A stretch of DNA of 64,000 nt, from IMG/VR virus record IMGVR_UViG_3300046787_000286, positions 62,001-126,000 of that record. One strand, written 5' to 3'. The position numbers were made by a program, and so were the translations under genes. The stretch's first letter is position 1. Every line of letters begins with the position of its first letter. The notes below the pieces were generated by a model, which saw only the letters and a program-made list of their open reading frames with translations, was not told the origin of the DNA and made no database searches. Positions 19,814 through 34,532 of this stretch are shown piece after piece.

Positions 19814-20602
19814 TTACTTTTTAAACACAGGAATTGGATTCATCTTGTGTATGTTGCGAGCACGAATCTCTCGATACTTCTTGAGTTGTGCTTTTTCTGT
19901 CTTGGTCAATGCTAGTGGATCCCATACACAGTTATCAGCTTGATCTAGTGCCATTGCATGTTCTAACTCTGGGTAAGTCATTCCTAACTGTGACTCGTCT
20001 GTGCGGTCGTCGTCCCATAACCCATCTGTTGGCGGTGCGTTAATGATCTCTTGCTCGATGCCCAATTCTCGAGCTATAGCCCACACTTCAGTTTTTAAGC
20101 AGTCGCCAATTGGGCTGATGTCTACACCGCCGTCGCCATACTTGGTAAAGAAGCCAACACCAAAGTCTTCTACTTTATTGCCAGTGCCTACAACAATACC
20201 GTTATGGCATTGTGCAATTTGATACAGCGTCATCATACGTAAACGAGCACGTGAGTTTGCTGATGCTAGCTTGTATGTATCATATGTGTCATCCTCGATT
20301 CCACAGAAAGGATCTACTTTCTTTTCGAATGCAGAAAACACTGGAGTTAAATCCATGCTCATGTGTGTAACGTTGTCAAACCGCTCTACTAGCCAACCGG
20401 CATGCAATGAGCTACGTTTGTCTAGCTTTTTATTCTGACGAATTGGCATTTGCACAACAATAGTTTTCAGCCCGGTCTTGGCACATAAAGTGCTAACAAC
20501 TGAGCTATCGATGCCGCCGGAGATACCAACAACTAGTGTAGTGACCTTTGCCTTCTTGGCATAGTCTTTGATCCATTTTGTAATTTGTGCGTGTAATTTC
20601 AT
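19814..20602 (-). CDS. nadE: NH3-dependent NAD+ synthetase
   Basis: SGGIDS PP-loop, NSRARLRM, GTGNKVE, FFTKYGDG, PTDGL...TDE...LG..Y; start MKLHAQ overlaps the queE stop. Confidence 0.88.
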   Translation of the reverse strand: MKLHAQITKWIKDYAKKAKVTTLVVGISGGIDSSVVSTLCAKTGLKTIVVQMPIRQNKKLDKRSSLHAGWLVERFDNVTHMSMDLTPVFSAFEKKVDPFCGIEDDTYDTYKLASANSRARLRMMTLYQIAQCHNGIVVGTGNKVEDFGVGFFTKYGDGGVDISPIGDCLKTEVWAIARELGIEQEIINAPPTDGLWDDDRTDESQLGMTYPELEHAMALDQADNCVWDPLALTKTEKAQLKKYREIRARNIHKMNPIPVFKK

Positions 20603-21459
20603 TATTTCCCCCAACCATTTCCCCACAAGTCGACGTGTAGTCGTGGACTGTAGTTGTAACCTTTGCTTAGTGCCCAATCTGCAACCTTAACACGGTTAGC
20701 AGCATAAGGAGTAACAACACCGCCTTGTGGCATTACATATACAACCCCAGTAAAGCCACCTGCTCTAAATTCTTTCACAGCACGTTCGACTTCGGCAAAG
20801 TGTTCTTCTGTTTCAACAACGAACTTAAGATACGTTGTACCATAGTCTTGATACATGCGTACAATTTCTGGGCGAATAGCTTCTTCCCACAGTTCACCAC
20901 TTGCACTTAGTTTAGCACTAACACTAAATGTAATTTCATTACCAGGACGATCACCCCAGTCTAACAAGTAGTCAATGAACTTAGGTTGCAAAGTTTGTGT
21001 GCCATTTGTTTCAAATGTAATATTCTTCAAGTCTGCCATATCCGGATGATCCAGCAGCTCTTGGTAAGCACGTTGCCAGCCTAACAAAGGCTCGCCACCT
21101 GTGATAACCAAATGTACATCGTTGCCGTTATCCTGTACCCAATGTTTGTTGGGAGTCAACGCCAACATTTGATCCACTAGGTCTTTGGTCTCAACCATCG
21201 GACTCAGTTCTTTAAACGCAGGATGCCAACTTGCGTAGCTGTCGCATCCAGTATTAACAAGGGGTAGACTAGTAAAATCCTTATACATCTCGATGTTCTT
21301 CGCCACGTCGTCTGCCTCTTTCGAAGTCTCGCCCGGCTTGCAACCGAAGCCCGAACAAGTAAAGTTACATCCGAAGGTTCGTAAGAATACTGAAGGAACG
21401 CCAACAAAGCGTCCTTCGCCCTGGGCAGAGTAAAAGAGTTCACTGATTTTTAATTTCAT
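20602..21459 (-). CDS. queE: 7-carboxy-7-deazaguanine synthase
   Basis: ELFYSAQGEGRFVGVPSVFLRTFGCNFTC...CDS, ITGGEP, ETNGT, RLHVDLWG. Confidence 0.92.
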   Translation of the reverse strand: MKLKISELFYSAQGEGRFVGVPSVFLRTFGCNFTCSGFGCKPGETSKEADDVAKNIEMYKDFTSLPLVNTGCDSYASWHPAFKELSPMVETKDLVDQMLALTPNKHWVQDNGNDVHLVITGGEPLLGWQRAYQELLDHPDMADLKNITFETNGTQTLQPKFIDYLLDWGDRPGNEITFSVSAKLSASGELWEEAIRPEIVRMYQDYGTTYLKFVVETEEHFAEVERAVKEFRAGGFTGVVYVMPQGGVVTPYAANRVKVADWALSKGYNYSPRLHVDLWGNGWGK

Positions 21460-21512
21460 AGTGTATTTAGACAAGATATTTTATATGCTATTATAATGGT
21501 TAAATAGATTTT

Positions 21513-22211
21513 ATGCAACCATTAAATTTACCAAAACTTATTGACAGTCCAGGCTTCATGTTAGCAGCCGATACTGTGTACTTTCAAAAATGGACAAAGT
21601 ATTTGTTCTTCAGTATTAAGAAACATGCACCTTGGGCGCACGTACATTTTCATGTGTTTGATCCAACTGCGGAAGATTTAGCCTGGTTGTCGGCAGCAGA
21701 TTGTAGTTATACATTTGAAACAACCCCATTAGATTATTGCCAGTCACACCAGGACAAGGTTGTGTATTGGTGCGCTGCAAGATATATTCGAACTACTGAA
21801 ATATACACTGATTCAACTCCTGTGATTAACCTAGATGCCGATAGCATTATGGTTTCTAGTTTAAGTCAAGAGCAATTTTTAAAAGACCTTGAACATAGCT
21901 GGGTACCAGTTGCTCCAAAGAGAGAAACTAGAAGTTTGTGTAGTGCGTTAGGTCTAGGGACTGATAACGGACGCTACGATGTTAGAAATGTATTACTAGA
22001 GGTATATAACAACTCTAGATTAACCTGGGCATTAGACCAACGACTATGCGATCAACTGCTAGACTCAGGCAAACTACAAGCAATGGACTTACGATACACA
22101 GATTTCAAAATGAAAGATACCTCTTACATCTGGACTGGTAAAGGAGACAGAGTTGATAAGTCTAGTTTCCAAAATGCACTGCGCCCGTATATAGGGTTAG
22201 TATCTCGCTAA
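21513..22211 (+). CDS. glycosyltransferase-like protein (GT-A, DAD motif)
   Basis: INLDADSI, DQ near the C-terminus, WTGKG; TTAAATA late motif upstream. Confidence 0.5.
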   Translation: MQPLNLPKLIDSPGFMLAADTVYFQKWTKYLFFSIKKHAPWAHVHFHVFDPTAEDLAWLSAADCSYTFETTPLDYCQSHQDKVVYWCAARYIRTTEIYTDSTPVINLDADSIMVSSLSQEQFLKDLEHSWVPVAPKRETRSLCSALGLGTDNGRYDVRNVLLEVYNNSRLTWALDQRLCDQLLDSGKLQAMDLRYTDFKMKDTSYIWTGKGDRVDKSSFQNALRPYIGLVSR

Positions 22212-22994
22212 TGATTCTTTAAGTCCTAGCAACGGAAGTTTATATTTTTCTAATTTGTCACCGTTGCCTGTGTAACTCATTCCTTGCTCAGTAACTTCGA
22301 TAAGAGATTTGTCTAGATTGTGTGTGTCGCAGTAGATACCTAATGTCTCGCTAAGGGTATACTTTTCAGCATACACACAGTTAATGTCTCGATCGATTAT
22401 GTTTCCATTGAGTACTGCATTAATGACCGTAGTAAAATCTTCGGCGCTGATCATATCAAATTTTCTATCAGTGATACTGAACTTATTGCCTTGCGCTAGA
22501 GAGGAATGTAATTTTTTAAGTAATCTAGCATTGTCTTCAGACGAGTCGAAACACCCAAACAATCGCAAATTATAACACATAGAATGTGTCCACAAGCATC
22601 TAGATATAAGATTTTTACTCATCCCGTAACTTTGTTGCGGTGAACAAGTGAATATGCTAGATTCTCTAGCACAATCAATTGGCTGACTAATATCAAACTC
22701 TGCACCTGTGCCGATATTAATTAATGTATCAAACTCACGACTATTAGACATGAGATTCATCACAGACAGAAGATTACTATTAACTATGTTACGATCTTCG
22801 GCCCATGGTGTGTTGCGACCAGCTGCACCACAATGGATTACTGCATCATATCTATTATGTTGAAAATGATTGTGTGTTGCTTCTGCGTCAGACAAGTCAA
22901 GTTCCTGTCGCGTAAGTGCAACGACATTGTATTGTAAATGTCTAGCAAGGTACGAGCCGAGGAATCCCCCGGCCCCTGTAATCAAAACCTTCAA
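22197..22994 (-). CDS. NAD-dependent sugar epimerase/reductase (extended SDR; YerF-like position)
   Basis: TGAGGFLG, YGMSK. Confidence 0.85.
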   Translation of the reverse strand: MKVLITGAGGFLGSYLARHLQYNVVALTRQELDLSDAEATHNHFQHNRYDAVIHCGAAGRNTPWAEDRNIVNSNLLSVMNLMSNSREFDTLINIGTGAEFDISQPIDCARESSIFTCSPQQSYGMSKNLISRCLWTHSMCYNLRLFGCFDSSEDNARLLKKLHSSLAQGNKFSITDRKFDMISAEDFTTVINAVLNGNIIDRDINCVYAEKYTLSETLGIYCDTHNLDKSLIEVTEQGMSYTGNGDKLEKYKLPLLGLKESLARY

Positions 22995-24751
22995 CGAATT
23001 CTTTCGTAGTTAAAGTAAGGATTGCCAGCTGCAAATTCTTCGTCGCTAACTAGTGGTGATTGATCGTTGATTGGGCGACCTTTCTCTAGCTTGGGCTCAA
23101 TTTGCACACCTGGGTGAATCTTGATTTCGATGATCCTACGTCCAGGTGCAAGCAATTCTGCGTTAATTTGATCTAGTGATGTAACTAGTTTGTAATCAAA
23201 GTCGAATGCTTCAGCAATTTTCTTAAAGTTAGGACGCCCCGGACCATTTTCTGTAGCAGCGTGTCGCCCATCCATGTAAGCATCTTGGAATTGACAAATC
23301 ATGCCTAGGCGATTGTTGTTAAACACAATGACTTTAATGTCTAGATCATATTCTTTGACTGTTTGCAATTCTTGCAAGTTCATCTGAATGCCGCCGTCAC
23401 CGTTAGAACAAATGTGTTGACGGTCTGGCGCTACTAATGCTGCACCAATTGATGCTGGCAACGCATATCCCATTGCATAATGCCCGGAACTTGTCATTAA
23501 CAACTGATCTTGGTCGCGATGGAAAGACTGGTAAACCCAACAGTGGTTGGCACCTGCATCCGTAGTAATAACAGCATTGGGTTCTGCTACTTTTTGTAAT
23601 TTTTCAACAACAAGATACGGACTCATTGTATCGTATTGCTTGCTATTTGAACTTGTATCTTTGTTAAAATACTTTGCTTTAAGTCCTTGACAATACTTTG
23701 GCCAGTCAGCATCAAACTTAGGCTTCTCTACTCCACGCAAGGCTTTCGAAAGATTGCGCAAATCAAAATGTAATCCTTTATAGTTTGCAGGATCTAGCTT
23801 TTCTAACTCGGCAGGATCGAGATCAACACACAATATTTCTGCATTGGGTGCAAAGTTTGCAGGGTTACCTGAACGCTGACGGTTGTCTAAACGTGATCCT
23901 AGCACAAGGATCTTGTCTGCGTTTTGAATTGCATTATTGCCTCCACGATTACCATATACACCAAAGTGACCAATGTAGTTAGGTGCTTCGTGATTAAAGT
24001 AGTTGAGTGCTGCCCAGGTAGCAACAAACGGAATTTTATTTGATTGCAACCAGCGTTCGAGTTCTACTTGTTGACCAGCAAGTCCAACACCTGCACCAAA
24101 GATAATCAATGGGCGATGTGCGCCTCCCAGGAATTGTTGGATTACTTTTCCTACTTGTTCAGGGGAGATACCTGTATCAACTGCTAACCACTTATCAGAG
24201 TCTGGCAATAACATAGTGCTATCTTCCATTTCTGCATTTTGCAAGTTCATTGGAATGTCAACTAGCACTGGGCCCATGCGACCTGAATATGCTTCTTCTA
24301 CTGCACGTTTTAATTCACGACGCATATCGTCATGTGTGGTTACGTTAACAGCATATTTGCAAACAGGTTTAACCATGCTAACAATATCCATTTGTTGGAA
24401 ACCTGCTTGACGCACAGCAGCACCACGATAGAGCTTTTGTTCTTCGTAGTTGACTTGTCCAGTAATATGCAAGCTAGGAATAGAATCATAATAACCACAC
24501 GCAATACCTGTGATTAAGTTAGATGCTCCTGGCCCTGATGTTGCCATTGACACACCTAGTTGCCCATTGGTACGCCATAATGCATCAGCTGCCATTGCTG
24601 CGGCTTGTTCGTGCTGGAAGCAAATAACATCCATGCCCTCCTCTAGTGCAATTTGATCAATTAAGAATGTGATTGCACCACCTTGCACTTGGAACACTTT
24701 GTTTGCACCAATTGCTTTTAAAAACTTAGCTACGTATTGACTACCTTTCAT
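22991..24751 (-). CDS. ThDP-dependent acetolactate-synthase-like enzyme (YerE-like)
   Basis: HEQAAAMAADA, TSGPGASN, GDGGIQMNLQEL...NN ThDP motif; sits among NDP-sugar genes. Confidence 0.88.
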   Translation of the reverse strand: MKGSQYVAKFLKAIGANKVFQVQGGAITFLIDQIALEEGMDVICFQHEQAAAMAADALWRTNGQLGVSMATSGPGASNLITGIACGYYDSIPSLHITGQVNYEEQKLYRGAAVRQAGFQQMDIVSMVKPVCKYAVNVTTHDDMRRELKRAVEEAYSGRMGPVLVDIPMNLQNAEMEDSTMLLPDSDKWLAVDTGISPEQVGKVIQQFLGGAHRPLIIFGAGVGLAGQQVELERWLQSNKIPFVATWAALNYFNHEAPNYIGHFGVYGNRGGNNAIQNADKILVLGSRLDNRQRSGNPANFAPNAEILCVDLDPAELEKLDPANYKGLHFDLRNLSKALRGVEKPKFDADWPKYCQGLKAKYFNKDTSSNSKQYDTMSPYLVVEKLQKVAEPNAVITTDAGANHCWVYQSFHRDQDQLLMTSSGHYAMGYALPASIGAALVAPDRQHICSNGDGGIQMNLQELQTVKEYDLDIKVIVFNNNRLGMICQFQDAYMDGRHAATENGPGRPNFKKIAEAFDFDYKLVTSLDQINAELLAPGRRIIEIKIHPGVQIEPKLEKGRPINDQSPLVSDEEFAAGNPYFNYERIR

Positions 24752-24760
24752 GGTATCTCC

Positions 24761-26080
24761 TTATTTGTATAAACTTAAGAAACCGCGAACAATTTTACCA
24801 ATGTAGGCAATTTGTTCGGGTGTGATTACAGGGCTAGTACCATGGAAGTAAGTATGGGTCATAGCATGTGTTGCGTTAGGGAAATTGTCCTTGGCCAGCT
24901 GCGGGTCCATTAAATGGCTATAAGCAGGCTGCAACATAATATTGCCAGCAAAGTAAGGACGAGTCTGGATCAAGTTCTCTTCTAGGTAATCCACAATGTC
25001 ACTGCGAGTAAACGGTGCATCTTTTCTAATAGTTAACGGGAACGCAAACCAGCTGGGATCACTCTTGGCAGTTGCTCTTGGCAAGTGGAAGAACTCTTCA
25101 TAGTCCTTGTAAATGTCAAACAGCAGTTGATAGTTACGTCGACGCAATGCGTGAATTTCTGGTAACTTTTTCAACTGTTCAAGACCCATAGCACACTGAA
25201 CTTCAATTGGTTTCATGTTGTAACCAATTTCGTCGTATACGTATTTGTGATCAAAAATTTCATCAGGTAAAGTAGGAATCCAGTTATTAAAACGATTGCC
25301 ACAAGTACCACACTTCAATTTGTTTGCTTCTGGCCCAACACAATAGCAGCCACGCCCCCATTCACGGAAGCTACGCAAGATAACATCTGTATTGGCATCG
25401 TTAGTTGCAACGTATCCACCTTCGCCCATGGTCATGTGATGTGCTGGATAGAAACTGCACGATGCCATTAAACCGTAACTGCCCAATGGCTTGCCATCAT
25501 ATGTGCTACCTAACGCATCACAGCAATCTTCTAGAAGAATCAAATTGTGTTGTTTCACTAATTCCATTAATCGATCCATTACTGGAGGATTACCTAGCAC
25601 GTGAGCAAACGTAATAACACGAATATCAGGGTTAGCTAATAAGGTTGACTCAACTTGATCTAAATCTAAGTTAAGTGTATCAAGTTCAATGTCTACAAAC
25701 ACTGGCTCAAAACCAACTTGCAATGTTGGGTTTAACGTTGTTGGAAATCCAGCAATAGGCATTAGAACTTTAGTGCCCTTGGGTAGGTTGTAGCCACGCT
25801 TGGATGTCAACGCTGACATCATTAATAAGTTACTAGATGATCCTGAGTTTGTTAAGATACCTTTGTCTTTACCAAAATACTTCGGAAACTCACGTTCAAA
25901 CTTTAGGCCATCGTCGCCCATAACAAGCCAACCCTTGAGCAAACTTGCGACCCCTGCTACAAATTCTTTTTCGTCAAAATATGACCCGGCATAGTTGACA
26001 AAATCTTTGCCAGCTACCCATGTTTTATTTTCTTGCTTTTGTTTAATGTGCTCTTGCACTAATTTAAGAATTTCTTCCAT
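24761..26080 (-). CDS. rfbH: CDP-4-keto-6-deoxyglucose 3-dehydratase (E1, RfbH/DdhC)
   Basis: NSGSSSNLL, SFYPAHHMTMGEGG (His in place of Lys), RDC-like GRGCYC...C, DHKYVYDEIGYN. Confidence 0.88.
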   Translation of the reverse strand: MEEILKLVQEHIKQKQENKTWVAGKDFVNYAGSYFDEKEFVAGVASLLKGWLVMGDDGLKFEREFPKYFGKDKGILTNSGSSSNLLMMSALTSKRGYNLPKGTKVLMPIAGFPTTLNPTLQVGFEPVFVDIELDTLNLDLDQVESTLLANPDIRVITFAHVLGNPPVMDRLMELVKQHNLILLEDCCDALGSTYDGKPLGSYGLMASCSFYPAHHMTMGEGGYVATNDANTDVILRSFREWGRGCYCVGPEANKLKCGTCGNRFNNWIPTLPDEIFDHKYVYDEIGYNMKPIEVQCAMGLEQLKKLPEIHALRRRNYQLLFDIYKDYEEFFHLPRATAKSDPSWFAFPLTIRKDAPFTRSDIVDYLEENLIQTRPYFAGNIMLQPAYSHLMDPQLAKDNFPNATHAMTHTYFHGTSPVITPEQIAYIGKIVRGFLSLYK

Positions 26081-26802
26081 TAGATAATACCTACTTCTTT
26101 ACTGATAAATTGCATTAAATTGATAACTTGTTGACTGCCACGGCTAGCATGGAAGTGTAAGATACGAGCGTCTTTAAGATTGATCCCATTCCAGTTATTG
26201 TGTTCAATAACTTCTTCAGGAGACAATGTTCTGAGTTTCATTGCCTGGTACGCCAGCCACGGATGTAAACGATCAGTGTCCGGTATGTCTTGTTTCCAGA
26301 ACATAGTGTTGTGTCGTAGTTGATCAAACCCCCAGTGTTGATCAGGATGACCTTCTCGTTGTTCCCACAACTGATCCCCTAGATCCCAAATATCCTGGCT
26401 CATAGTATGAGGGTAGTACTGAATGTCATCATTAAAGTAATTTGTAAATTCTTTATATGATTTGGGGTCCGTGTAATTGAATAAGCGATATTCCTTGAAC
26501 TTACTATCAAACAATTTAGTAGGTTGGGTCATCAGTGTATCGGCACCAGCCCAGAAAATATTACACGGCTCTTTGTGCCAAAGTTCCTTGATTGCATTCC
26601 AGTTTGCTACTGTATACTCATCGTTGTTTTTTACAGGTTCTGTCCAAAGCACTGCTTCAAACGGCTCCTCAACAAACTTCTGAAAGCTAGCCACACTTAG
26701 GTCATACATTTGCCTGTAGAACGTATAAAGATCAGTTCGTTTTTGATGTAGCCATCCGTCCTCAATTGGACGGACAGCGCAAACTAGATAATTTTTTACC
26801 AT
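26080..26802 (-). CDS. glycosyltransferase-like hypothetical protein
   Basis: in the sugar operon; FWAGADT and ILHFHASR motifs resemble GT-A enzymes. Confidence 0.5.
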   Translation of the reverse strand: MVKNYLVCAVRPIEDGWLHQKRTDLYTFYRQMYDLSVASFQKFVEEPFEAVLWTEPVKNNDEYTVANWNAIKELWHKEPCNIFWAGADTLMTQPTKLFDSKFKEYRLFNYTDPKSYKEFTNYFNDDIQYYPHTMSQDIWDLGDQLWEQREGHPDQHWGFDQLRHNTMFWKQDIPDTDRLHPWLAYQAMKLRTLSPEEVIEHNNWNGINLKDARILHFHASRGSQQVINLMQFISKEVGII

Positions 26803-27776
26803 ACAAAGTTCTCAATGTAATATTGTACTATCTCTTCTAGGGCTGTGTCAAAGACTGATTGCGGGTACCATCCCAGCCCCTTGAGTTTCGAGTCATCGAT
26901 TGCGTACCTTACATCTTGCCCCATACGCTGACTATCAAAAATATAATCTTCCCAATTATCCGAAGCATCTTCACCTTTGTAGATTTTTAGAAGCTTCTTG
27001 ATAACTTCTCGGTTGGGCATTTCGGCATTTCCTGAAATATTGTATATCTCATTAGTAACACCTGATTTGATAATAGTTACAACAGCAGTAGCAGTATCAG
27101 CAGCATGCAACCAAGTACGCACAGGTTTTCCTTGATCGTGAAGATCAATTTTCTTACCTAGCGTTAGGTATTTGATTGACTTAGGGATAAGTTTTTCAAC
27201 ATACTGTCCTGTGCCATAGTTATTGGTTGGTCGGACAATAACATACTTTAAGCCATATGTTCTAGCCCACGCAGTAATAAGCATGTCGGCAGCAGCTTTA
27301 CTTGCTGAGTATGGATTACTAGGCTTTAACAAATCTGTTTCTGAATGAGTACCTGCTTCAATGTCGCCGTAAACTTCGTCTGTTGAGAAATGTAAAAATA
27401 CAGGTTGCTTGTGTCGCGGCTGTTCTTTGATTAGTTCTAGTAGATGATGCACACCATTTACATTACTGTGCAAAAATACTCCACTGCTCATAATACTATT
27501 ATCAACGTGAGTTTCTGCAGCCATGTTAATAACATAGTCGCAATCGTGTAACCGATCTAGTTCATTGATATCAGTCTTGATAAACTTAAATGTTTTGTAT
27601 TTTTTAAATTTTTCTAAGAAGTGTTCATTACTAGCATAGGTACATTTATCTACACCTATAACATACCAACCCCGAGCTAGTAATTCGTGAGTCACATGCG
27701 ACCCCATAAACCCAAGGCATCCAGTTACATAAACTATCTTCTTCAAATCTTTCTCGCTTTGACTAATAAATGCCAT
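26796..27776 (-). CDS. rfbB: NDP-glucose 4,6-dehydratase (RmlB-like)
   Basis: TGCLGFMG, AAETHVDNSI, STDEVYG, PYSASKAA, NNYG. Confidence 0.9.
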   Translation of the reverse strand: MAFISQSEKDLKKIVYVTGCLGFMGSHVTHELLARGWYVIGVDKCTYASNEHFLEKFKKYKTFKFIKTDINELDRLHDCDYVINMAAETHVDNSIMSSGVFLHSNVNGVHHLLELIKEQPRHKQPVFLHFSTDEVYGDIEAGTHSETDLLKPSNPYSASKAAADMLITAWARTYGLKYVIVRPTNNYGTGQYVEKLIPKSIKYLTLGKKIDLHDQGKPVRTWLHAADTATAVVTIIKSGVTNEIYNISGNAEMPNREVIKKLLKIYKGEDASDNWEDYIFDSQRMGQDVRYAIDDSKLKGLGWYPQSVFDTALEEIVQYYIENFVW

Positions 27777-28522
27777 CCGAGATATTCTCGAACAGCTTCA
27801 CGCATTGCATCTGGCATAGCAGCAAACCATGGCTCTAATTCATAGCGGCCTGCCTTATACGCATCTACATTATACATAAAGCAATGATCCTGACGTACAC
27901 GTTCTATATGCCAGCCTGGACCCAACAACTCAGGAATTTCTTCTTTGGTGAAACTTTTAGCATACGGGCAACCAGCTTGTGCTTCGTATTGGTCAAGCCC
28001 TTTATAAATCATTGCTTGCTTCCAGGAATTCTTCGCGTATACCATGAAGCGGAACTCTCCACCAGGATTAAGCAACGAGTGTACATTGTTGATTATAGTA
28101 TTGATTGCTGGAAAGTGATGAATAACACCATAGCTGTAAACAAGATCAAATTTTCCCAGGTTTGCAGTGTCGGTGCTATTACTTGCATCAATGTTATGGA
28201 ATTCTCCATCGAGCCCTAGTACTTCAAAACGTTGTCGAGCAATTTCCACACTTTGGTCACTGTAGTCAATGCCTACATATTCTGCACCGTGCTTGGCAAA
28301 TTCTTCGCCGTCGCTAGCAATACCACATCCAACTTCTAAAACACGTTTGCCTTGCCACAAATGAAATCCAGCAAATTCTGGAATGTGCGGCTCCACTTGA
28401 TATCGACGTTCGCTAACTTGATGGAAAAACTTTGGTGTTCCAAACTCAGCTGTGCCGTGTTTGATATTACAAGGCTGTGCATTCCAATATTTTTTAATTC
28501 GTGCCTCTAACTCGTCACTCAT
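27743..28522 (-). CDS. class I SAM-dependent methyltransferase
   Basis: VLEVGCGIASDG, FDLVYSYGVIHH, LNPGG. Confidence 0.85.
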   Translation of the reverse strand: MSDELEARIKKYWNAQPCNIKHGTAEFGTPKFFHQVSERRYQVEPHIPEFAGFHLWQGKRVLEVGCGIASDGEEFAKHGAEYVGIDYSDQSVEIARQRFEVLGLDGEFHNIDASNSTDTANLGKFDLVYSYGVIHHFPAINTIINNVHSLLNPGGEFRFMVYAKNSWKQAMIYKGLDQYEAQAGCPYAKSFTKEEIPELLGPGWHIERVRQDHCFMYNVDAYKAGRYELEPWFAAMPDAMREAVREYLGWHLLVKARKI

Positions 28523-29349
28523 GCTGCACCCATCTTTGTCATTGGTATTTGGAATTGTTTGCATTGATTATTGGTATCATTTTCTTGTAGTTTAATCCAC
28601 GGGTCTTGTTTACCAGACTTGACGTTTGCCCACCAGGTGATATCCAAGTTCTTAGATGCCATGTAATCAGATAGCTTTTCAACGTCTTGCATTCTACGCA
28701 AGTGCCAACTCACGTGATGAAAATCTCTCGAGTCTGATGGATTGCCTTCGTACATAACACGATTTTTGTAAGTGTCATCATTGTTATTGCCAGTGAGATC
28801 ATGACGATCGTGTGTGACCCAAACAGGAACCCTTTCGAAAATATCCAACAAGTAAGCCTGTTGACTTAGCCAAGCATCAGAAATCTGATGTGGACTTAGA
28901 TATCCCAAATGGTCTAACCATTCTCGAGGGACGATAGGGAAAATTGAATATGGATGATCGTTGTGTGTATGAACAGCCAAACATTTAAACTCCCCTGTGT
29001 GTTTAGCAATAACCTTGTCCCACCCAGCGGTGTCCATCATTGCATCGTCGTTCCAGAACATTAACCAATCAGCGTCAGACGACACTGCAAGAGCGTTAAC
29101 ATATTCGTTTAATCTATTGTATCCAAGTCTTTCAAAAACTTGTGCATCATAGTTGACTTTTTTCTCAATTAACCACGGCTCCAATTCGTTTTGGAAATGT
29201 TCGATGCCAGGTGTATCATCGTGATCGAACCCTAGTAATAGTTGAACTGTGTTTAAATCAACTGCTCGGTTAATTAAACTCATTACGCTGCGGCTTAGCG
29301 CATCTGTGCGTCCTCGTGTGGGTAGTAAAATTGCAATGCTATATTTCAT
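28519..29349 (-). CDS. GT2-family glycosyltransferase
   Basis: LLPTRGR, FDHDD, WNDD motifs. Confidence 0.75.
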   Translation of the reverse strand: MKYSIAILLPTRGRTDALSRSVMSLINRAVDLNTVQLLLGFDHDDTPGIEHFQNELEPWLIEKKVNYDAQVFERLGYNRLNEYVNALAVSSDADWLMFWNDDAMMDTAGWDKVIAKHTGEFKCLAVHTHNDHPYSIFPIVPREWLDHLGYLSPHQISDAWLSQQAYLLDIFERVPVWVTHDRHDLTGNNNDDTYKNRVMYEGNPSDSRDFHHVSWHLRRMQDVEKLSDYMASKNLDITWWANVKSGKQDPWIKLQENDTNNQCKQFQIPMTKMGAA

Positions 29350-29386: not shown

Positions 29387-29884
29387 TTACGCAAATAGAT
29401 CTTCGTTCCATTCACGGTGGCCTTCTCGATACGCCATGTTGCTTTGTGTTTCGCGCACTTCAACACGATAGCACCATAAACGATCTGCTTCGCCAGGTCC
29501 CCACATCTCAGGAATGTAAACACCATTTACATACTTGTACAGCATGTCGCTTAGTGCTTCACAACCTAGTGCAGGTAGCACAACGATCTTGGCCATGTTC
29601 TTCTCTTGTAGCAGTTTAAATGTTTCCAACTCTGGATCATCTTGTGCAACAATAAGCGTATGGTCGAATTGGTCTTCCAGTGTCTTCTTTAGTTCCTTGA
29701 GACCGCCGTAGTCTGCGGCCCAGTTACGAACGTCTAGATCATTGGTTCCAAAATAGAACTTCATTGAAAAAGCGTAGCCGTGGATTAAGTTACAGTGACT
29801 ATCAGCACGCCATTGTCTGTAAGCAACAGGGAAGGCGTTGTGATACTCTTTTGTAGAGGTGTATTTGTATTGGATGGGTGTCAT
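29387..29884 (-). CDS. queD: 6-carboxy-5,6,7,8-tetrahydropterin synthase
   Basis: HCNLIHGY (CxxxHG), FDHT, VEVRET. Confidence 0.88.
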   Translation of the reverse strand: MTPIQYKYTSTKEYHNAFPVAYRQWRADSHCNLIHGYAFSMKFYFGTNDLDVRNWAADYGGLKELKKTLEDQFDHTLIVAQDDPELETFKLLQEKNMAKIVVLPALGCEALSDMLYKYVNGVYIPEMWGPGEADRLWCYRVEVRETQSNMAYREGHREWNEDLFA

Positions 29885-30081: not shown

Positions 30082-30483
30082 TCATTTTGGTAACTGATAG
30101 CCGCCACTTTTGTAGTTTGCTTGCCCGTGAATAACACCACGCACACCGCCGATTGGGTTAGCACAGTCACCGGTTTTGCGAGGAATCAGATGCACATGCG
30201 GATACATTACTGTTTGGCCAGCAGCTTCGCCCATGTTGATTCCAACGTTGAATGCATCACACATGCCTTCATCAACTAGTTTCTGGCCATGATAAAATGC
30301 ACGTTTAAAACAGTGTTCGATTGTGGCGCCATTGTTTGTTACAGGCACAAACAACAAGTGTCCCTTAGCAACAGGAAATCTATCTTGAAATACTGCGACT
30401 TGTAGATCACTAAGTTCGTGAACTTTTAAATCCCAAGGCGCTACACCTGCTTGTGCGGCCTTGTCTAATGTATTGTATTTCAT
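30082..30483 (-). CDS. HIT-family hydrolase
   Basis: PVAKGHLL, AAGQTVMYPHVHLIPR (HxH triad region). Confidence 0.9.
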   Translation of the reverse strand: MKYNTLDKAAQAGVAPWDLKVHELSDLQVAVFQDRFPVAKGHLLFVPVTNNGATIEHCFKRAFYHGQKLVDEGMCDAFNVGINMGEAAGQTVMYPHVHLIPRKTGDCANPIGGVRGVIHGQANYKSGGYQLPK

Positions 30484-30486
30484 AGT

Positions 30487-31704
30487 TTATAATTCCTTTG
30501 TATAATATTTTCCATTAAGATATTGTAGCACATAGACCTTGTTGTTAGTAGTGTTTTGATAAACTGTGCCGTGCCCAATGTTCCAACTTCCTCGACCTGC
30601 CCCTGCTGTTGCAGCCATTGCATCTAATACGTCTTGTTTATAAGGAACCCATGAACCATTGACAATTTGATAAATTTTCATATGGCCATTATCGGCGCCG
30701 AACAATACAGTTGTATGCCCAGCTGTGAAGATAGTATGTGAATAATAAGCATTATTATTTTGGTTGTCAAACGCAGCCTGTGCTGTGAAGTTGCCTTGCC
30801 CGTCACCTAATAATACTTGCTTCGCCCCAGGCACGCCGGAAACAACATCGTTAAACACCGCTACAAAATCTGTGTGTCCATCATTGTTGATGTCCATTGC
30901 CCGACTATTAATCAAGTCAAATTCGGCGCCATTATTTGGTGCAGTGATACCTATGTTAGATAGCACACCAAGATTGTTGTCCAAATTAACAATGGAAGAT
31001 TTATAGCCAGCAACTAATCCTGACTGTCCCATTATGATAGAAATTGTATTATTTTGATTGTGAACTACACTACATGTAGCAAAATGATCGTTGGGTAATA
31101 CTGTTGTTTGGATTGTAAAGTTACGATTGCCATTATTAACGTATAAGCCACCATTGGCGCCACTTACTAATAAGTCAATATCGCCGTCGCGGTCAATATC
31201 GTCGTAGCAGGCACCATGTGCATACACTTGATCAGACAAGTCTTGTCGAATAAACTGTCCTGAATTGTTCCAGAAGAACACACTGTTAGCAAGCGGTTGA
31301 CCAGCACCGTCGTCAAACGCTGGAAAGAAAATATCATTGCGGCCATCGTTGTCAAAGTCTGCAATAAAAATACGTTGACTACCGCTGTAAGTGTTCGACG
31401 GAAGAACCTCAGTTGTTTTTTCAGTCAACGAGCCATCTGTGTTTTGATAAAATACATAGATGCGAGCAGTGTGAGTGCCGTCATTAACCCATCCACCTAC
31501 TACAATGTCATCAAGCCCGTCGTTGTTTAAGTCTCCTACTGCTAAAGTATTAACAAGATTTAGGCCTGTATTAGTTGTTCGCAATACTGTGTTTAGTCCA
31601 GCTGCTGGCACAACGCCAGTGGAAGACGATGACCCTCCGCCACCACCTCCGCAGCCAGTTAATACTAAAGTTAACAGAATAATAGTTACAGTACTTTTGA
31701 TCAT
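30487..31704 (-). CDS. FG-GAP/VCBS-repeat lipoprotein
   Basis: lipobox LTGC, Gly/Ser linker, repeated DxNxDGxxD motifs; promoter TTGACC-17-TATAAT at 31711-31739. Confidence 0.8.
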   Translation of the reverse strand: MIKSTVTIILLTLVLTGCGGGGGGSSSSTGVVPAAGLNTVLRTTNTGLNLVNTLAVGDLNNDGLDDIVVGGWVNDGTHTARIYVFYQNTDGSLTEKTTEVLPSNTYSGSQRIFIADFDNDGRNDIFFPAFDDGAGQPLANSVFFWNNSGQFIRQDLSDQVYAHGACYDDIDRDGDIDLLVSGANGGLYVNNGNRNFTIQTTVLPNDHFATCSVVHNQNNTISIIMGQSGLVAGYKSSIVNLDNNLGVLSNIGITAPNNGAEFDLINSRAMDINNDGHTDFVAVFNDVVSGVPGAKQVLLGDGQGNFTAQAAFDNQNNNAYYSHTIFTAGHTTVLFGADNGHMKIYQIVNGSWVPYKQDVLDAMAATAGAGRGSWNIGHGTVYQNTTNNKVYVLQYLNGKYYTKEL

Positions 31705-32288: not shown

Positions 32289-32990
32289 TTAACGTGGTGC
32301 AAACTCTTGTTGAAGTTTGATGTTGTCAAAGAACTCTTTCTTTACCGAAGCATCTGTCTTAAATGCACCATTAAGAACTGTCGTCTGGGTGAGACTAGAG
32401 TGAGCCATAATACCACGATTCTCACAGCATCCATGGGTAGCTTGGATATAAACTGCAACATCTTTGGATCCAGTTGCAAATTCAATTTCACGAGCGATGT
32501 CCATACAGAGTTCTTCTTGTAGTGTTCCTCGTCGAGCACACCATTGCGCAATTCGAGTGTATTTCGAAAGGCCAATGAGTTTTGGTCCAGCAATAATGCC
32601 AATATAAGCCACACCCGTAACAGGCTGGTGATGATGCGAACACATGCTCTTAAGCTCTGAACGCACAACCAACATACCATCGTAGGCTCCTTCTGTATCA
32701 TTGGGGAAAGCCGTAGCATTAGGGCTCTCCTCGTATCTGCCAGCCATGATTTCATATACATACATCTTTGCTAAACGGCGTGCTGTACCCATTGAGTTTG
32801 GATCGTTTTGTCGATCAATAATCAAACTGTCTAGCACACCTTCAAACTTGCCTGTGAGCTCATCCACTAGCAAGTCTTTTTCTTTATCAGTAATAAAGTC
32901 ACTGATGTTATCACCTGCCCAGTAACGCTTGTCTGCGTCAGTTAATCGTTTGCGAATTACTTGTGATAGGTTTAAACTGTTGTCTGTCAT
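32289..32990 (-). CDS. folE: GTP cyclohydrolase I
   Basis: SMCSHHHQP, GLSKYTR, QEEL, HGCCENRG. Confidence 0.95.
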   Translation of the reverse strand: MTDNSLNLSQVIRKRLTDADKRYWAGDNISDFITDKEKDLLVDELTGKFEGVLDSLIIDRQNDPNSMGTARRLAKMYVYEIMAGRYEESPNATAFPNDTEGAYDGMLVVRSELKSMCSHHHQPVTGVAYIGIIAGPKLIGLSKYTRIAQWCARRGTLQEELCMDIAREIEFATGSKDVAVYIQATHGCCENRGIMAHSSLTQTTVLNGAFKTDASVKKEFFDNIKLQQEFAPR

Positions 32991-32991
32991 A

Positions 32992-33585
32992 TTAGTCCTT
33001 AATTGTGATGGTTCTTAAATCTGGGTATTCAACTAGCTTGGGTTTAACTGGAAACTCTTTAATACCTTGCAGTAGTGCAATTCCTTTGACTGCTTCTTCT
33101 GGTGTAGGTTTATAGTGATAACCAACCCTAAACTCTTTCTGTTGTTCCCACGGTGATATATTTAGATCGCGACCGTCGTATCGCATACGAATTATTACAT
33201 CATACGCTGCTTTGTCATCTAACAGTATAGCACCACCACGGCCTATATGTAAAGGCTTTGTGTGCCCAAAGCTCAAACATTGCATTTGCCCTTCGCGATA
33301 CATGTTCTTTTCTAGTCTACGTGCTGAATCCCAAATTCGAGTTTTTCTAAACTTGTATTCGCCTACCCACTGTTCATTACCTTCGTAGTAGTATTGAATT
33401 TTCAACTTGTGCATTAGCATCGGAATACTCAAGTAAGTAAAAGGTGTGAACGCACAAAACTCAACCTTGTCATATCTCATACAAAGCTCAATAGCGTGAG
33501 TGCAACAATCGGTCATGATTGCATACGGTGCGCCAGTATATTCTGCTAGTGCGATTTCAAATCGATTAATATCGTCAAATGTCAT
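32992..33585 (-). CDS. short DegT/DnrJ-type PLP aminotransferase-like protein
   Basis: DCCTHAIEL, DSA, SFGHTKPL..GRGGAIL. Confidence 0.75.
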   Translation of the reverse strand: MTFDDINRFEIALAEYTGAPYAIMTDCCTHAIELCMRYDKVEFCAFTPFTYLSIPMLMHKLKIQYYYEGNEQWVGEYKFRKTRIWDSARRLEKNMYREGQMQCLSFGHTKPLHIGRGGAILLDDKAAYDVIIRMRYDGRDLNISPWEQQKEFRVGYHYKPTPEEAVKGIALLQGIKEFPVKPKLVEYPDLRTITIKD

Positions 33586-34532
33586 TTGTTATACCAATTC
33601 CATGCATGTTGAATCATTGCATCTAAATCGTGGTGACGCCAAGCTCCAGCTACTAAATCGAACTTAGCCGAAGTAGCAGTTAACGTTGCAGGATCTCCAG
33701 ACCGTGCTGCACTGATATGAATATTAGGACGCTTACCGGTAATTTCTGTTGCACGTAGTATCACCTGCTGAACTGAGTGTCCATGATTTGATCCAAGATT
33801 ATAGATACCTGCAGGAATCTTGTGATAGATCGCCAAAGCATGTGCTCTAGCAATGTCTTCAACATGAACATAATCACGAACGCAGGTACCGTCAGCAGTA
33901 GGGTAATCCATCCCATAAACCTCAAATGTAGATCCATCCTTTGCAGCCTCTAAGAATTTAGCAATTAAATGAGTAGCACCTGGCTCTTGTCCATGGCAGC
34001 CCTTTGGGTCAGCACCACAGGCATTAAAATAACGAAAGCTAACGTAGTCCAAGCCATATGCTCGATGATATGACTTTAGAATCATGTCAATCATATACTT
34101 GCTTTCGCCATAAGGACTAATAGGTAATTCCGGGAACGATTCGTCTATTGGATTCAGCACTGGCTCGCCGTATGTAGCTGCTGAAGAACTAAAAATAAAT
34201 TTAGTCTTAGGTAAACTCTTGCGAACAATGTCCAACAACTTTAGAGTTTTAACCACATTGTTGTTGTAGTATTCACTAGGATCTTTTACACTTGGTCCAA
34301 CAAGACTAGTGCCAGCACAGTGAATAATAGCATCAGGTTGTTTTGCAATAATCCAGCTTAGAGCCACATCGCTAGCAAAGTCCTGGTACAAGTATCCGTC
34401 GCACACGCCTAACAAATGCTTAGGCGGATCTCTACGATCGATGCCGTACACCACGTGCCCTGCGTCTTTCAACAACAGGGCAGTTTGTCCGCCAATGTAG
34501 CCGGCTGAGCCAGTAACAATTACAGTTGACAT
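33582..34532 (-). CDS. galE: UDP-glucose 4-epimerase
   Basis: GSAGYIG, SSSAATYG, PYGESK, RYFNACG, DGTCVRDYVHV. Confidence 0.9.
   Translation of the reverse strand: MSTVIVTGSAGYIGGQTALLLKDAGHVVYGIDRRDPPKHLLGVCDGYLYQDFASDVALSWIIAKQPDAIIHCAGTSLVGPSVKDPSEYYNNNVVKTLKLLDIVRKSLPKTKFIFSSSAATYGEPVLNPIDESFPELPISPYGESKYMIDMILKSYHRAYGLDYVSFRYFNACGADPKGCHGQEPGATHLIAKFLEAAKDGSTFEVYGMDYPTADGTCVRDYVHVEDIARAHALAIYHKIPAGIYNLGSNHGHSVQQVILRATEITGKRPNIHISAARSGDPATLTATSAKFDLVAGAWRHHDLDAMIQHAWNWYNK

What the first reader, a model, noticed from the sequence alone, without database searches (positions are those of the whole stretch)
22197..29349. Yersiniose-type branched-chain 3,6-dideoxysugar pathway in a phage
Seen: contiguous GT2, methyltransferase, 4,6-dehydratase, GT-like protein, RfbH (3-dehydratase E1), ThDP AHAS-like enzyme and SDR reductase. 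Established: in Yersinia, DdhB, DdhC/E1 (with E3), YerE (ThDP two-carbon transfer from pyruvate) and YerF make CDP-yersiniose A. Inference: the phage makes a rare branched, possibly methylated sugar for virion, DNA or host-surface glycosylation. The ALS-like gene is unlikely to serve amino-acid synthesis. E3 and the nucleotidyltransferase are not in the window.
Basis: partly seen in the sequence, partly recalled or inferred. Interest (0 to 1): 0.75.

Follow-up and report, generated by a model that had tools for sequence, protein, structure and literature searches.

The report
Phage branched deoxysugar and glycosyltransferase cassette
A freshwater jumbo-phage-like virus carries a conserved seven-gene cassette that most likely builds a rare carbon-branched 3,6-dideoxy sugar (yersiniose-like, but probably not on CDP) and transfers it with its own glycosyltransferases; this chemistry has so far been described only in bacteria.

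Summary
Seven overlapping or abutting minus-strand genes fill 22197-29349. They are a GT2-like protein, a SAM methyltransferase, an NDP-hexose 4,6-dehydratase, a GT8/GT34-like protein, an E1/RfbH 3-dehydratase, a ThDP enzyme and a short RmlD-like reductase.

The ThDP enzyme sits in a clade (100/99 support) with every bacterial homologue that lies beside an E1 gene. That clade includes the yerE-position gene of a Yersinia ddhDABC locus and excludes IlvB, IlvI and IlvG. E1 keeps the His-for-Lys change and all four Fe-S cysteines.

The cassette order is kept in 16 IMG/VR contigs. The core (dehydratase, E1, ThDP, RmlD-like SDR) is also kept in two more distant phage contigs.

The "Yersinia-type" label is only partly right. 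The dehydratase is RmlB-like, not CDP-type. Bacterial YerE-like loci almost always carry DdhA and DdhB. One phage relative adds RmlC, so the carrier is probably dTDP (or UDP).

No nucleotidyltransferase, E3, ferredoxin or flavodoxin lies in the 214-kb record, so the host must supply them. The acceptor is unknown. Both glycosyltransferases are soluble, and the GT8-like one resembles protein-glycosylating enzymes.

Verdict: a new viral variant of a known bacterial pathway, of moderate to high interest.

The parts
28519..29349 (-). GT2-like glycosyltransferase (276 aa), soluble. Accessory: absent from the distant relatives L106 and L107.
   Evidence: phrog_14945 at 4e-12. Atlas neighbours carry PF00535. 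ILLPTRGR and FWNDDA (DXD) motifs are invariant in 9 homologues. The N-terminal half matches TarP/TarS/SpsA by Foldseek, from a model of only pLDDT 59. No hydrophobic segment.
27743..28564 (-). Class I SAM-dependent methyltransferase (273 aa). Acceptor unknown. Accessory: absent from L002, L106 and L107.
   Evidence: Methyltransf_12/31/23/25/11 at 1e-15 to 1e-19. phrog_22502, 215 bits. Only generic small-molecule methyltransferases in the PDB. No homologue in 80 bacterial YerE-like or AHAS loci.
26796..27776 (-). NDP-glucose 4,6-dehydratase of the RmlB (dTDP-glucose) type.
   Evidence: TIGR01181 310 bits (cut-off 365) against TIGR02622 82 bits. The ten best PDB relatives are all dTDP-glucose 4,6-dehydratases, best 2hun at 242 bits. 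35%/164 bits to E. coli RfbB, 22%/54 bits to Yersinia DdhB.
26080..26802 (-). GT-A fold, GT8/GT34-like (retaining-type) glycosyltransferase (240 aa), soluble. It keeps its place between the dehydratase and E1 in all close relatives and in L106.
   Evidence: AF2 pLDDT 75. Foldseek: glycogenin E 9e-6, TM 0.57; PBCV-1 A64R TMt 0.61-0.65. Atlas: GT8/Nucleotid_trans phage clusters. Invariant FWAGADT and HFHASRG motifs. 59% homologue in L106.
24761..26080 (-). E1/RfbH-type PMP- and [2Fe-2S]-dependent NDP-4-keto-6-deoxyhexose 3-dehydratase.
   Evidence: NF011936 446.5 bits, above the 423 cut-off. 330 bits to Yersinia E1 structures 3bcx/3bb8, against 195 for ColD. His214/His215 and Cys186/187, 245, 247 and 260 are invariant across phage homologues and Yersinia DdhC.
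22991..24751 (-). YerE-like ThDP-dependent carboligase (586 aa), inferred to add a 2-oxoacid-derived acyl branch to the C4 keto group.
   Evidence: TPP_enzyme_N/M/C. Catalytic Glu48, GDG451-453 and NN478-479 are conserved. The best PDB hit is 5ahk (314 bits), above E. coli IlvB 6lpi (260). IQ-TREE places it in the 100/99 clade with all E1-linked homologues. The AU test rejects grouping with AHAS, p = 4e-7.
22197..22994 (-). Short extended SDR, RmlD-like (265 aa). Inferred ketoreductase of the acyl side chain (YerF role).
   Evidence: Epimerase 1e-19, RmlD_sub_bind 7e-14. It overlaps the ThDP gene by 4 nt. Homologues at 24-31% identity (56-93 bits) lie in nine bacterial YerE-like loci, directly beside the ThDP gene in six, and never together with the Yersinia yerF-position type. 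Only E = 0.004 to that Yersinia protein.

Best explanation
The cassette is a virus-encoded deoxysugar factory with its own transferases.

1. Inferred: a host-made NDP-glucose, most likely dTDP-glucose and possibly UDP-glucose, is oxidised and dehydrated by the RmlB-like enzyme to NDP-4-keto-6-deoxyglucose.
2. Family assignment shown, activity inferred: the E1/RfbH enzyme (PMP and a [2Fe-2S] cluster) removes the 3-OH. Electrons come from a host ferredoxin or flavodoxin system, because the record encodes no E3.
3. Inferred from clade and context: the YerE-like ThDP enzyme decarboxylates a 2-oxoacid and adds the acyl anion to the C4 ketone. Pyruvate is the simplest donor, since no aldolase or other donor-making gene lies nearby. 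The product is a 4-C-acetyl-3,6-dideoxyhexose with a tertiary alcohol.
4. Inferred: the RmlD-like SDR reduces the side-chain ketone to a 1-hydroxyethyl branch, giving a yersiniose-like sugar.
5. Fold shown, acceptor unknown: the soluble GT8/GT34-like transferase, which travels with the core genes, transfers the sugar. In this lineage the GT2-like transferase and the methyltransferase elaborate the glycan further.

The most likely acceptor is a virion protein, but this is the weakest step.
For: - Gene identities.
- E1 catalytic His and four Cys ligands are invariant.
- Careful tree of 52 ThDP proteins: a 40-row clade (100/99, branch length 0.65) holds all 21 loci with an E1 neighbour and the phage family. 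One of those loci is Yersinia vastinensis L053, whose context is ddhD-ddhA-ddhB-ddhC-ThDP. IlvB, IlvI and IlvG lie outside. Forcing phage and AHAS together costs 116 lnL units, AU p = 4e-7. A FastTree of 232 proteins gives the same split (99*).
- 26 of 78 bacterial relatives have E1 within 10 kb; none of the AHAS-clade loci does.
- No IlvN or IlvH homologue in the record.
- The cassette order is conserved in 16 viral contigs. The dehydratase, E1, ThDP and RmlD-like SDR core persists at 56-62% ThDP identity in L106 and L107.
- L107 adds PF00908 RmlC and a second RmlD-like SDR, which argues for dTDP chemistry.
- SDRs of the phage type lie next to YerE-like genes in nine bacterial loci and are mutually exclusive with the Yersinia yerF-position type.
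- E3 is also missing from most bacterial E1-YerE loci, so its absence is not disqualifying.
- The glycosyltransferases have no transmembrane segment.
- PDB fold neighbours of the 240-aa transferase include the protein glycosylators glycogenin, PBCV-1 A64R, GlyE and UGGT.
Against: - There are no biochemical data.
- No nucleotidyltransferase, E3, Fer2 or flavodoxin lies in the 214 kb, though the record is only 62% complete.
- The 4,6-dehydratase scores below the RmlB equivalog cut-off (310 against 365). The record also encodes GalE and a UDP-glucose dehydrogenase, so UDP is a live alternative carrier.
- All bacterial E1-YerE loci examined are CDP-based, so an E1 working on a dTDP or UDP sugar alongside a YerE-like enzyme has no characterised precedent here.
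- Pairwise identity does not discriminate: 34% to the Yersinia YerE-position protein and 33% to the IlvG-like L055. The assignment rests on the tree and the context.
- The phage clade has no characterised member. The review read notes that some predicted YerE-like enzymes (RhopE, SpirE) showed no ketone acceptance in vitro.
- The SDR could instead be a C4 ketoreductase.
- The AU group was named after the tree had been seen.
- I found no capsid or terminase gene in the record, so 'phage' rests on the IMG/VR class, PHROG hits and viral-only neighbour clusters.
Confidence: 0.6

Rival explanations
1. The ThDP gene is an auxiliary acetohydroxyacid synthase that boosts host branched-chain amino-acid synthesis, and its position next to sugar genes is coincidental.
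For: Its best NCBIfam matches are all AHAS large-subunit models, e.g. PRK08978 at 381 bits. JGI annotates homologues as acetolactate synthase. It is 31-34% identical to Salmonella, E. coli and Staphylococcus AHAS genes.
Against: Every AHAS model scores at about half its cut-off or less. The tree and AU test place it apart from IlvB, IlvI and IlvG. No regulatory subunit is present in the record. The E1-ThDP-SDR adjacency, with 4-nt and 9-nt junctions, is kept in every relative examined.
Confidence: 0.04
2. The cassette makes an unbranched 3,6-dideoxyhexose (abequose-, paratose- or ascarylose-like). The RmlD-like SDR reduces C4 directly, and the ThDP enzyme acts on a different substrate or on only part of the flux.
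For: The SDR's nearest solved relatives are the 4-ketoreductases RmlD and GDP-6-deoxy-4-hexulose reductase, at weak scores of 22-29 bits. It is not orthologous to the Yersinia yerF-position protein. L107 holds two RmlD-like SDRs.
Against: The ThDP gene sits between E1 and the SDR and overlaps the SDR, as in ddhC-yerE-yerF. The same SDR type lies next to YerE-like genes in nine bacterial loci and replaces the Yersinia-type reductase there. The ThDP gene is retained in all relatives.
Confidence: 0.12
3. The pathway and product are as in the best explanation, but the acceptor is the host envelope (LPS, capsule or S-layer glycan), so that infected cells exclude other phages. The virion is not the acceptor.
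For: In bacteria YerE-like sugars are LPS components. The neighbourhood encodes a lipoprotein with FG-GAP repeats. GT2 fold neighbours include the wall-teichoic-acid glycosylators TarP and TarS, of which TarP is prophage-encoded by my own recollection, not checked here.
Against: No flippase, polymerase, undecaprenyl-phosphate transferase or membrane-bound glycosyltransferase was seen in the cassette, and both transferases are soluble. The record shows no integrase in the parts sampled. The GT8-like fold neighbours are mainly protein glycosylators.
Confidence: 0.15
4. The sugar is attached to phage DNA, for example to a modified base, to protect against restriction.
For: The cassette is interleaved with GTP cyclohydrolase I, QueD and a QueE-like radical SAM gene. 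The nearby GT4-like protein has a tRNA-queuosine mannosyltransferase cluster among its language-model neighbours, at rank 34 of 100.
Against: The record has no DpdA/TGT and no QueC. Its ThyA is a bona fide thymidylate synthase above the equivalog cut-off, so there is no sign of hydroxymethyl-pyrimidine DNA. To my knowledge the known DNA glucosyltransferases of T-even phages are GT-B enzymes using UDP-glucose, not GT-A ones.
Confidence: 0.07

Closest known systems
CDP-yersiniose A pathway of Yersinia (ddhD-ddhA-ddhB-ddhC-yerE-yerF), seen here in Y. vastinensis locus L053
   Same: It has the same E1 then ThDP carboligase then reductase order. E1 has conserved His and Cys ligands. The ThDP enzyme falls in the same 100/99 clade.
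   Different: The phage has an RmlB-type instead of a CDP-type 4,6-dehydratase. It has no cytidylyltransferase and no E3. Its reductase is non-orthologous. Two soluble GT-A transferases and a methyltransferase are embedded in the cassette. E1 is only 40% identical to DdhC, whereas bacterial E1s in YerE loci are 47-69% identical.
YerE-like ThDP lyases (YpYerE, PpYerE, ErwE, JanthE, MMAR_2332; reviewed in PMC12247030 and PMC9306805)
   Same: Same three-domain decarboxylase-superfamily architecture, the same linkage to deoxy-keto-sugar genes, and the same clade separate from AHAS. The best PDB relative, 5ahk, is PpYerE by my recollection. JanthE (8rph, identity confirmed) also scores highly.
   Different: The viral lineage is distinct (100/100, branch length 0.96) and has no characterised member. 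Donor and acceptor are unknown. The characterised sequences themselves could not be placed in my tree.
dTDP-deoxysugar pathways that use E1 homologues without a dedicated E3 (e.g. SpnQ in forosamine synthesis; from my own knowledge, not checked here)
   Same: An RmlB-type dehydratase is followed by an Fe-S/PMP 3-dehydratase that borrows general cellular ferredoxin or flavodoxin reductases. This matches the missing E3.
   Different: Those pathways are actinomycete secondary metabolism and lack a YerE-like branching step. No sequence comparison with SpnQ was possible.
Virus-encoded glycan synthesis (chlorovirus PBCV-1 A64R capsid glycosylation; giant-virus fibril sugars; mycobacteriophage virion glycosylation; the last two from my own knowledge)
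   Same: The virus carries both sugar-nucleotide tailoring enzymes and soluble GT-A transferases. The 240-aa protein's fold matches A64R (TMt 0.61-0.65).
   Different: As far as my literature searches show, no C-branched or 3,6-dideoxy sugar pathway has been reported for a virus.

Membership tests
YerE-like ThDP carboligases | ThDP enzyme of the decarboxylase superfamily with N, M and C domains, a catalytic Glu and a GDG...NN ThDP-Mg motif | tested here: met
   PF02776, PF00205 and PF02775 are present. Glu48, G451-D452-G453 and N478-N479 are invariant or nearly so in 20 sequences.
YerE-like ThDP carboligases | Phylogenetic placement with sugar-linked YerE-type enzymes and apart from AHAS | tested here: met
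   Clade support is 100/99 with all 21 E1-linked loci, including the Yersinia locus. AU p = 4e-7 against grouping with AHAS. Caveat: the characterised YerE, ErwE, PpYerE and JanthE sequences were not in the tree.
YerE-like ThDP carboligases | Gene adjacent to deoxy-keto-sugar genes (E1/ddhC), with no AHAS regulatory subunit | tested here: met
   E1 ends 9 nt upstream. This is conserved in 16 viral loci plus L106 and L107. The record has no IlvN or IlvH hit.
YerE-like ThDP carboligases | Carboligation of a 2-oxoacid onto a ketone acceptor (NDP-4-keto-3,6-dideoxyhexose) | not testable with these tools
   This needs an enzyme assay.
E1 / RfbH (NDP-6-deoxy-4-hexulose 3-dehydratase) | Score above the curated equivalog cut-off | tested here: met
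   NF011936 scores 446.5 bits against a cut-off of 423.
E1 / RfbH (NDP-6-deoxy-4-hexulose 3-dehydratase) | His in place of the aminotransferase Schiff-base Lys, and four Cys ligands of the [2Fe-2S] cluster (C-X57-C-X-C-X7-C in Yersinia E1; motif recalled from the literature) | tested here: met
   His214 aligns with E1 His220. Cys187, 245, 247 and 260 align with E1 Cys193, 251, 253 and 261. All are invariant in 9 sequences.
E1 / RfbH (NDP-6-deoxy-4-hexulose 3-dehydratase) | Dedicated E3 reductase (Fer2 plus FNR-like) encoded alongside | tested here: not met
   The 214 kb has no PF00111, PF00175 or DdhD homologue. Most bacterial E1-YerE loci also lack it within 10 kb.
CDP-yersiniose A pathway (ddhABCD plus yerEF) | Glucose-1-phosphate cytidylyltransferase (DdhA) | tested here: not met
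   The record has no PF00483 and no DdhA homologue. The record is 62% complete.
CDP-yersiniose A pathway (ddhABCD plus yerEF) | CDP-glucose 4,6-dehydratase (DdhB, TIGR02622) | tested here: not met
   TIGR02622 scores 82 bits against a cut-off of 278. Identity to Yersinia DdhB is 22%. The enzyme is RmlB-like instead.
CDP-yersiniose A pathway (ddhABCD plus yerEF) | YerF-type side-chain reductase | tested here: inconclusive
   Only E = 0.004 over 99 residues to the Yersinia yerF-position protein. However, the phage-type SDR occupies the same position in nine bacterial YerE-like loci.
RmlB (dTDP-glucose 4,6-dehydratase) | Equivalog-level similarity | tested here: inconclusive
   TIGR01181 scores 310 bits, below the 365 cut-off. 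All ten PDB hits at E <= 1e-40 are dTDP-glucose 4,6-dehydratases. RmlC co-occurs in relative L107. UDP-glucose use is not excluded.
Glycosyltransferase family 2 (276-aa protein) | PF00535-type GT-A domain with a DXD motif | tested here: inconclusive
   No Pfam hit at 1e-3. It does hit a PHROG glycosyltransferase family, has GT2 atlas neighbours and has an invariant NDD motif. Only the N-terminal ~100 residues of a model with pLDDT 59 superpose on GT2 structures.
GT8/GT34-like retaining GT-A (240-aa protein) | GT-A fold with a DXD-type metal site and a C-terminal His motif | tested here: inconclusive
   The fold is met: TM 0.57 to glycogenin at E 9e-6. There is no Pfam hit. The DXD position reads G-A-D-T, with a single Asp. 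hhalign to the GT34-annotated protein of L107 gives only 18% probability, though both share the WAG[AT]DT motif.

The most novel reading that the evidence does not exclude
This freshwater jumbo-phage lineage makes a previously undescribed sugar nucleotide: a dTDP- or UDP-linked (not CDP-linked), C4-acyl-branched, possibly O-methylated 3,6-dideoxyhexose. It uses soluble GT-A enzymes to decorate its own virion proteins with it. This could form part of a much larger virus-encoded glycan programme, given the GT4-like protein, GalE, UDP-glucose dehydrogenase, carbamoyltransferase, eight or more radical SAM enzymes and a 4775-aa ORF in the same record. It would be the first branched-chain sugar pathway known in any virus. 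It would also be the first E1/YerE pair found working off the RmlB branch.
Probability: 0.3. Interest if true: 0.75.

Novelty: new variant of a known kind. Interest (0 to 1): 0.58.

Why it matters
C-branched 3,6-dideoxyhexoses are rare bacterial surface sugars. The YerE-like enzymes that make them are valued biocatalysts for chiral tertiary alcohols. A widespread, well-conserved viral clade of these enzymes enlarges that enzyme pool: more than 100 protein clusters and 16 or more viral contigs, from many lake metagenomes.

It also shows that phages can carry the demanding Fe-S, PMP and ThDP steps of deoxysugar chemistry while leaving sugar activation and electron supply to the host. The E1/YerE chemistry may not be confined to CDP-sugars.

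If the sugar ends up on virions, it would be a bacterial-virus counterpart to the self-made glycans of giant viruses. That would bear on phage adsorption, on grazing or immune recognition, and on stability in freshwater.

Tried and rejected
- Megablast of the region against 50,697 GenBank phage records found no match.
- tblastn of the ThDP enzyme against those records gave only hits of 34% identity or less. These were ordinary AHAS genes, mostly on bacterial-like or unannotated records, so no cultured relative exists there.
- A promoter and terminator scan of 19.5-32.5 kb found no more sites than shuffled sequence, so transcription-unit borders could not be defined.
- Contexts of the nearest non-family representatives, P0121 and P0122, lie on contigs of 2.6-3.8 kb and are uninformative. 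P0122 is followed by an SDR.
- RNA evidence is ambiguous. No RNA run holds the window's own sequence. Four freshwater metatranscriptome libraries hold contigs 80-90% alike over the ThDP, E1, dehydratase and methyltransferase genes. One is a 2785-nt contig spanning ThDP and E1. DNA carry-over cannot be excluded, so I do not count this as proof of expression.
- Searches of the 214-kb record for PF00483, PF00111, PF00175, PF00258, PF00908, PF06508, PF01702, PF02511, PF17289 and PF07068 were all negative. The record is 62% complete, and the Gp23 control rang nowhere.
- Literature searches found no viral YerE-like or 3,6-dideoxy pathway. '5AHK' could not be tied to PpYerE in the held library, so that identity rests on my memory.
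- I considered DNA glycosylation and rated it unlikely: ThyA is genuine, and there is no TGT or QueC.
- I considered the AHAS-as-AMG reading and rejected it.

Full report
**What is there.** The window is bases 62001-126000 of a 214,006-base IMG/VR virus record, linear and 62% complete by CheckV. Between 22197 and 29349 lie seven minus-strand ORFs with gaps of -46 to +9 nt. In order of transcription they are:

- a 276-aa GT2-like protein
- a 273-aa class I SAM methyltransferase
- a 326-aa NDP-hexose 4,6-dehydratase
- a 240-aa protein with no family hit
- a 439-aa E1/RfbH 3-dehydratase
- a 586-aa ThDP enzyme
- a 265-aa RmlD-like SDR

- The 240-aa protein folds (pLDDT 75) into a GT-A domain. Its nearest solved structures are glycogenin (E 9e-6, TM 0.57) and the PBCV-1 capsid glycosyltransferase A64R. 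Its language-model neighbours are viral GT8/Nucleotid_trans clusters.
- The 276-aa protein has the N-terminal ILLPTRGR and FWNDDA motifs and GT2 neighbours. It gave only a poor model (pLDDT 59), of which only the first ~100 residues superpose on TarP, TarS and SpsA.
- Neither has a hydrophobic segment.

**Is the ThDP enzyme YerE-like or an AHAS?** Pairwise identity cannot tell. The enzyme is 34% identical to the ThDP gene of a Yersinia locus and 33% to an IlvG-like gene. All AHAS equivalog models score at about half their cut-offs or less.

I collected several sets of sequences:

- 150 cluster representatives
- 80 named genome loci with 10-kb flanks
- E. coli IlvB and IlvI as references, with Gcl and PoxB as outgroups

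Twenty-six of the 78 bacterial loci used have an E1 homologue within 10 kb. One is Yersinia vastinensis L053. Its context is E3-like reductase, glucose-1-P cytidylyltransferase (467 bits), CDP-glucose 4,6-dehydratase (516 bits), RfbH (744 bits), ThDP gene, then a 310-aa ORF. That is the classical ddhDABC-yerE-yerF layout.

- A FastTree of 232 proteins splits the IlvB/IlvI/IlvG clade from everything else at 99*.
- A careful IQ-TREE (LG+C20+F+G4 PMSF, 52 rows) puts all 21 E1-linked loci, the Yersinia gene and the phage family in one clade with 100/99 support and a branch length of 0.65.
- Forcing the phage family together with AHAS costs 116 log-likelihood units, AU p = 4e-7. The group was named after the tree had been seen.
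- Among solved structures the best match is 5ahk (314 bits), which I recall to be PpYerE. It scores above E. coli IlvB (260 bits) and JanthE 8rph (245 bits; its identity was confirmed).
- No IlvN or IlvH homologue is in the record.

The amino-acid-synthesis reading is therefore rejected.

**E1.** The protein passes the RfbH equivalog cut-off. It scores 330 bits against Yersinia E1 structures, compared with 195 for the Fe-S-free ColD. In that alignment His214 matches E1 His220, the residue that replaces the aminotransferase lysine. Cys187, 245, 247 and 260 match the [2Fe-2S] ligands Cys193, 251, 253 and 261. All are invariant in eight phage homologues (the window's own among them) and Yersinia DdhC. 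It is therefore an E1-type enzyme that needs an external electron source.

**Where the Yersinia analogy breaks.**

- The 4,6-dehydratase is RmlB-like. TIGR01181 scores 310 bits and the CDP model 82 bits. Its ten best PDB relatives are all dTDP-glucose 4,6-dehydratases. It is 35% identical to E. coli RfbB and 22% to Yersinia DdhB.
- In contrast, most bacterial loci with a YerE-like gene beside E1 carry DdhA- and DdhB-type (CDP) genes, and none of them shows only an RmlB-type dehydratase.
- The phage E1 is also an outlier, at 40% identity to DdhC against 47-69% for the bacterial ones.
- The record has no nucleotidyltransferase, Fer2, FNR-type, flavodoxin or DdhD homologue.
- E3 is also missing near most bacterial E1-YerE pairs, so general host reductases are a reasonable source of electrons.
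- The SDR is not an orthologue of the Yersinia yerF-position protein. Homologues of the phage SDR do occur in nine bacterial YerE-like loci, directly beside the ThDP gene in six. They never co-occur with the Yersinia type, which is found in three loci. This suggests non-orthologous replacement of the same step.

**Conservation and the core.**

- Sixteen IMG/VR contigs keep the order QueD, GT2-like, MT, dehydratase, GT8-like, E1, ThDP, SDR, radical SAM, NadE at 47-95% identity. One of them lacks the methyltransferase.
- L106 (ThDP 56% identical) has only SDR, dehydratase, GT8-like homologue (59%), E1 and ThDP.
- L107 (ThDP 62% identical) has RmlC (PF00908), GT34, E1, ThDP, SDR, GT34, GT17, a second RmlD-like SDR and the dehydratase.
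- The core is therefore the dehydratase, E1, the ThDP enzyme, an RmlD-like SDR and a retaining-type GT-A transferase. The GT2-like gene and the methyltransferase are lineage-specific extras.
- The RmlC in L107 argues for dTDP chemistry. The GalE (288.6 bits, above the 262.3 cut-off) and a UDP-glucose dehydrogenase in this record keep UDP open as an alternative.

**Ecology.** The stretch, or close relatives of it, occurs in about twenty freshwater, lake and wetland metagenomes. More than 100 protein clusters are 50-98% identical to the ThDP enzyme. Four freshwater metatranscriptome libraries hold relatives 80-90% alike, including one contig spanning ThDP and E1. DNA carry-over is not excluded.

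**Mechanism proposed.**

1. Host NDP-glucose (dTDP favoured over UDP) is converted to the 4-keto-6-deoxy sugar.
2. E1 removes the 3-OH, using host electrons.
3. The ThDP enzyme adds an acyl branch, most simply acetyl from pyruvate, at C4.
4. The SDR reduces the side chain.
5. The GT8/GT34-like enzyme transfers the sugar, with optional further glycosylation and methylation.

Family assignments, clade membership and synteny are shown. Every catalytic step, the nucleotide, the donor acid and the acceptor are inferred.

I favour virion proteins as the acceptor, for three reasons: the transferases are soluble, the fold neighbours are protein glycosylators, and no lipid-carrier or export genes are present. 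This preference is weak. DNA is less likely, because ThyA is a genuine thymidylate synthase and no TGT/DpdA or QueC is present.

**Comparison and novelty.** The module works like the ddhC-yerE-yerF part of the yersiniose pathway. It fails the membership test for the CDP pathway on DdhA, DdhB and DdhD. My literature searches found YerE-like enzymes only in bacterial LPS and natural-product contexts, and no viral example. I class it as a new variant of a known kind: viral, grafted onto an RmlB-type dehydratase, and dependent on the host for sugar activation and electrons.

**Caveats.**

- No capsid or terminase gene was found in the parts of the record I sampled.
- The viral nature rests on the IMG/VR class, a phage-type DNA polymerase (phrog_262, 646 bits), many PHROG hits, and neighbour clusters that are 100% viral.

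Noticed in passing
window 32289-32990, 29387-29884, 20602-21474: GTP cyclohydrolase I, a QueD-like PTPS and a weakly QueE-like radical SAM gene flank and interleave the sugar cassette, and this layout is conserved in relatives. The 214-kb record has no QueC and no TGT/DpdA, so it is unclear whether a 7-deazaguanine (or a pterin) is made or where it would go.
   Followed up: partly
window 32992-35723: A second sugar module: a GalE above its equivalog cut-off (33582-34532), a 396-aa GT4-like (GT-B) phage protein (34533-35723) and a conserved truncated 197-aa DegT-like protein (32992-33585). A tRNA-queuosine mannosyltransferase cluster appears among the GT4-like protein's language-model neighbours, at rank 34 of 100.
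   Followed up: partly
window 30487-31704: A 405-aa FG-GAP repeat protein starts with a lipoprotein-type signal (…LTLVLTGCGGGG). It may be a phage-encoded envelope lipoprotein.
   Followed up: no
window 30082-30483: A small HIT-family (HinT-like) protein is conserved next to QueD in relatives. HIT enzymes can act as nucleotidyl hydrolases or transferases, and this is the only nucleotide-handling candidate near the cassette.
   Followed up: no
window 19814-20677: A genuine NAD+ synthetase (NadE, TIGR00552 184 bits, above its cut-off) lies directly downstream of the cassette region. It is also adjacent to the cassette in the distant relative L106.
   Followed up: no
window 21513-22211 (+ strand): A 232-aa plus-strand ORF with no family hit interrupts the minus-strand block between the SDR and the radical SAM gene. 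Among the 16 related contigs it is found only in L002, which looks like a mobile insertion.
   Followed up: no
G000:C1 1239-34885 (outside the window; L101): A 4775-aa ORF is followed by at least six tandem radical SAM genes (21.8-32.3 kb) and a Nol-like carbamoyltransferase (33404-34885). Two further radical SAM genes lie at 167.7 and 193.8 kb. This is an unusually large modification arsenal for a phage.
   Followed up: partly
G000:C1 208643-209884, 126988-129231, 39994-40962: A UDP-glucose dehydrogenase (phrog_9148, 301 bits), a Lon-like ATP-dependent protease (807 bits) and a further RmlB-like SDR (25% identical to E. coli RfbB) are encoded elsewhere in the record.
   Followed up: no
window 40766-41449 and 42212-43156: There are weak sulfotransferase (PF03567, 1e-3) and methyltransferase-like hits in ORFs just upstream of the DNA polymerase. 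These may be further glycan- or metabolite-tailoring genes.
   Followed up: no
L107 1-3737: The related phage contig carrying the RmlC-containing version of the cassette also encodes two guanylate/adenylate-cyclase-domain proteins, one with a CHASE2 sensor domain.
   Followed up: no
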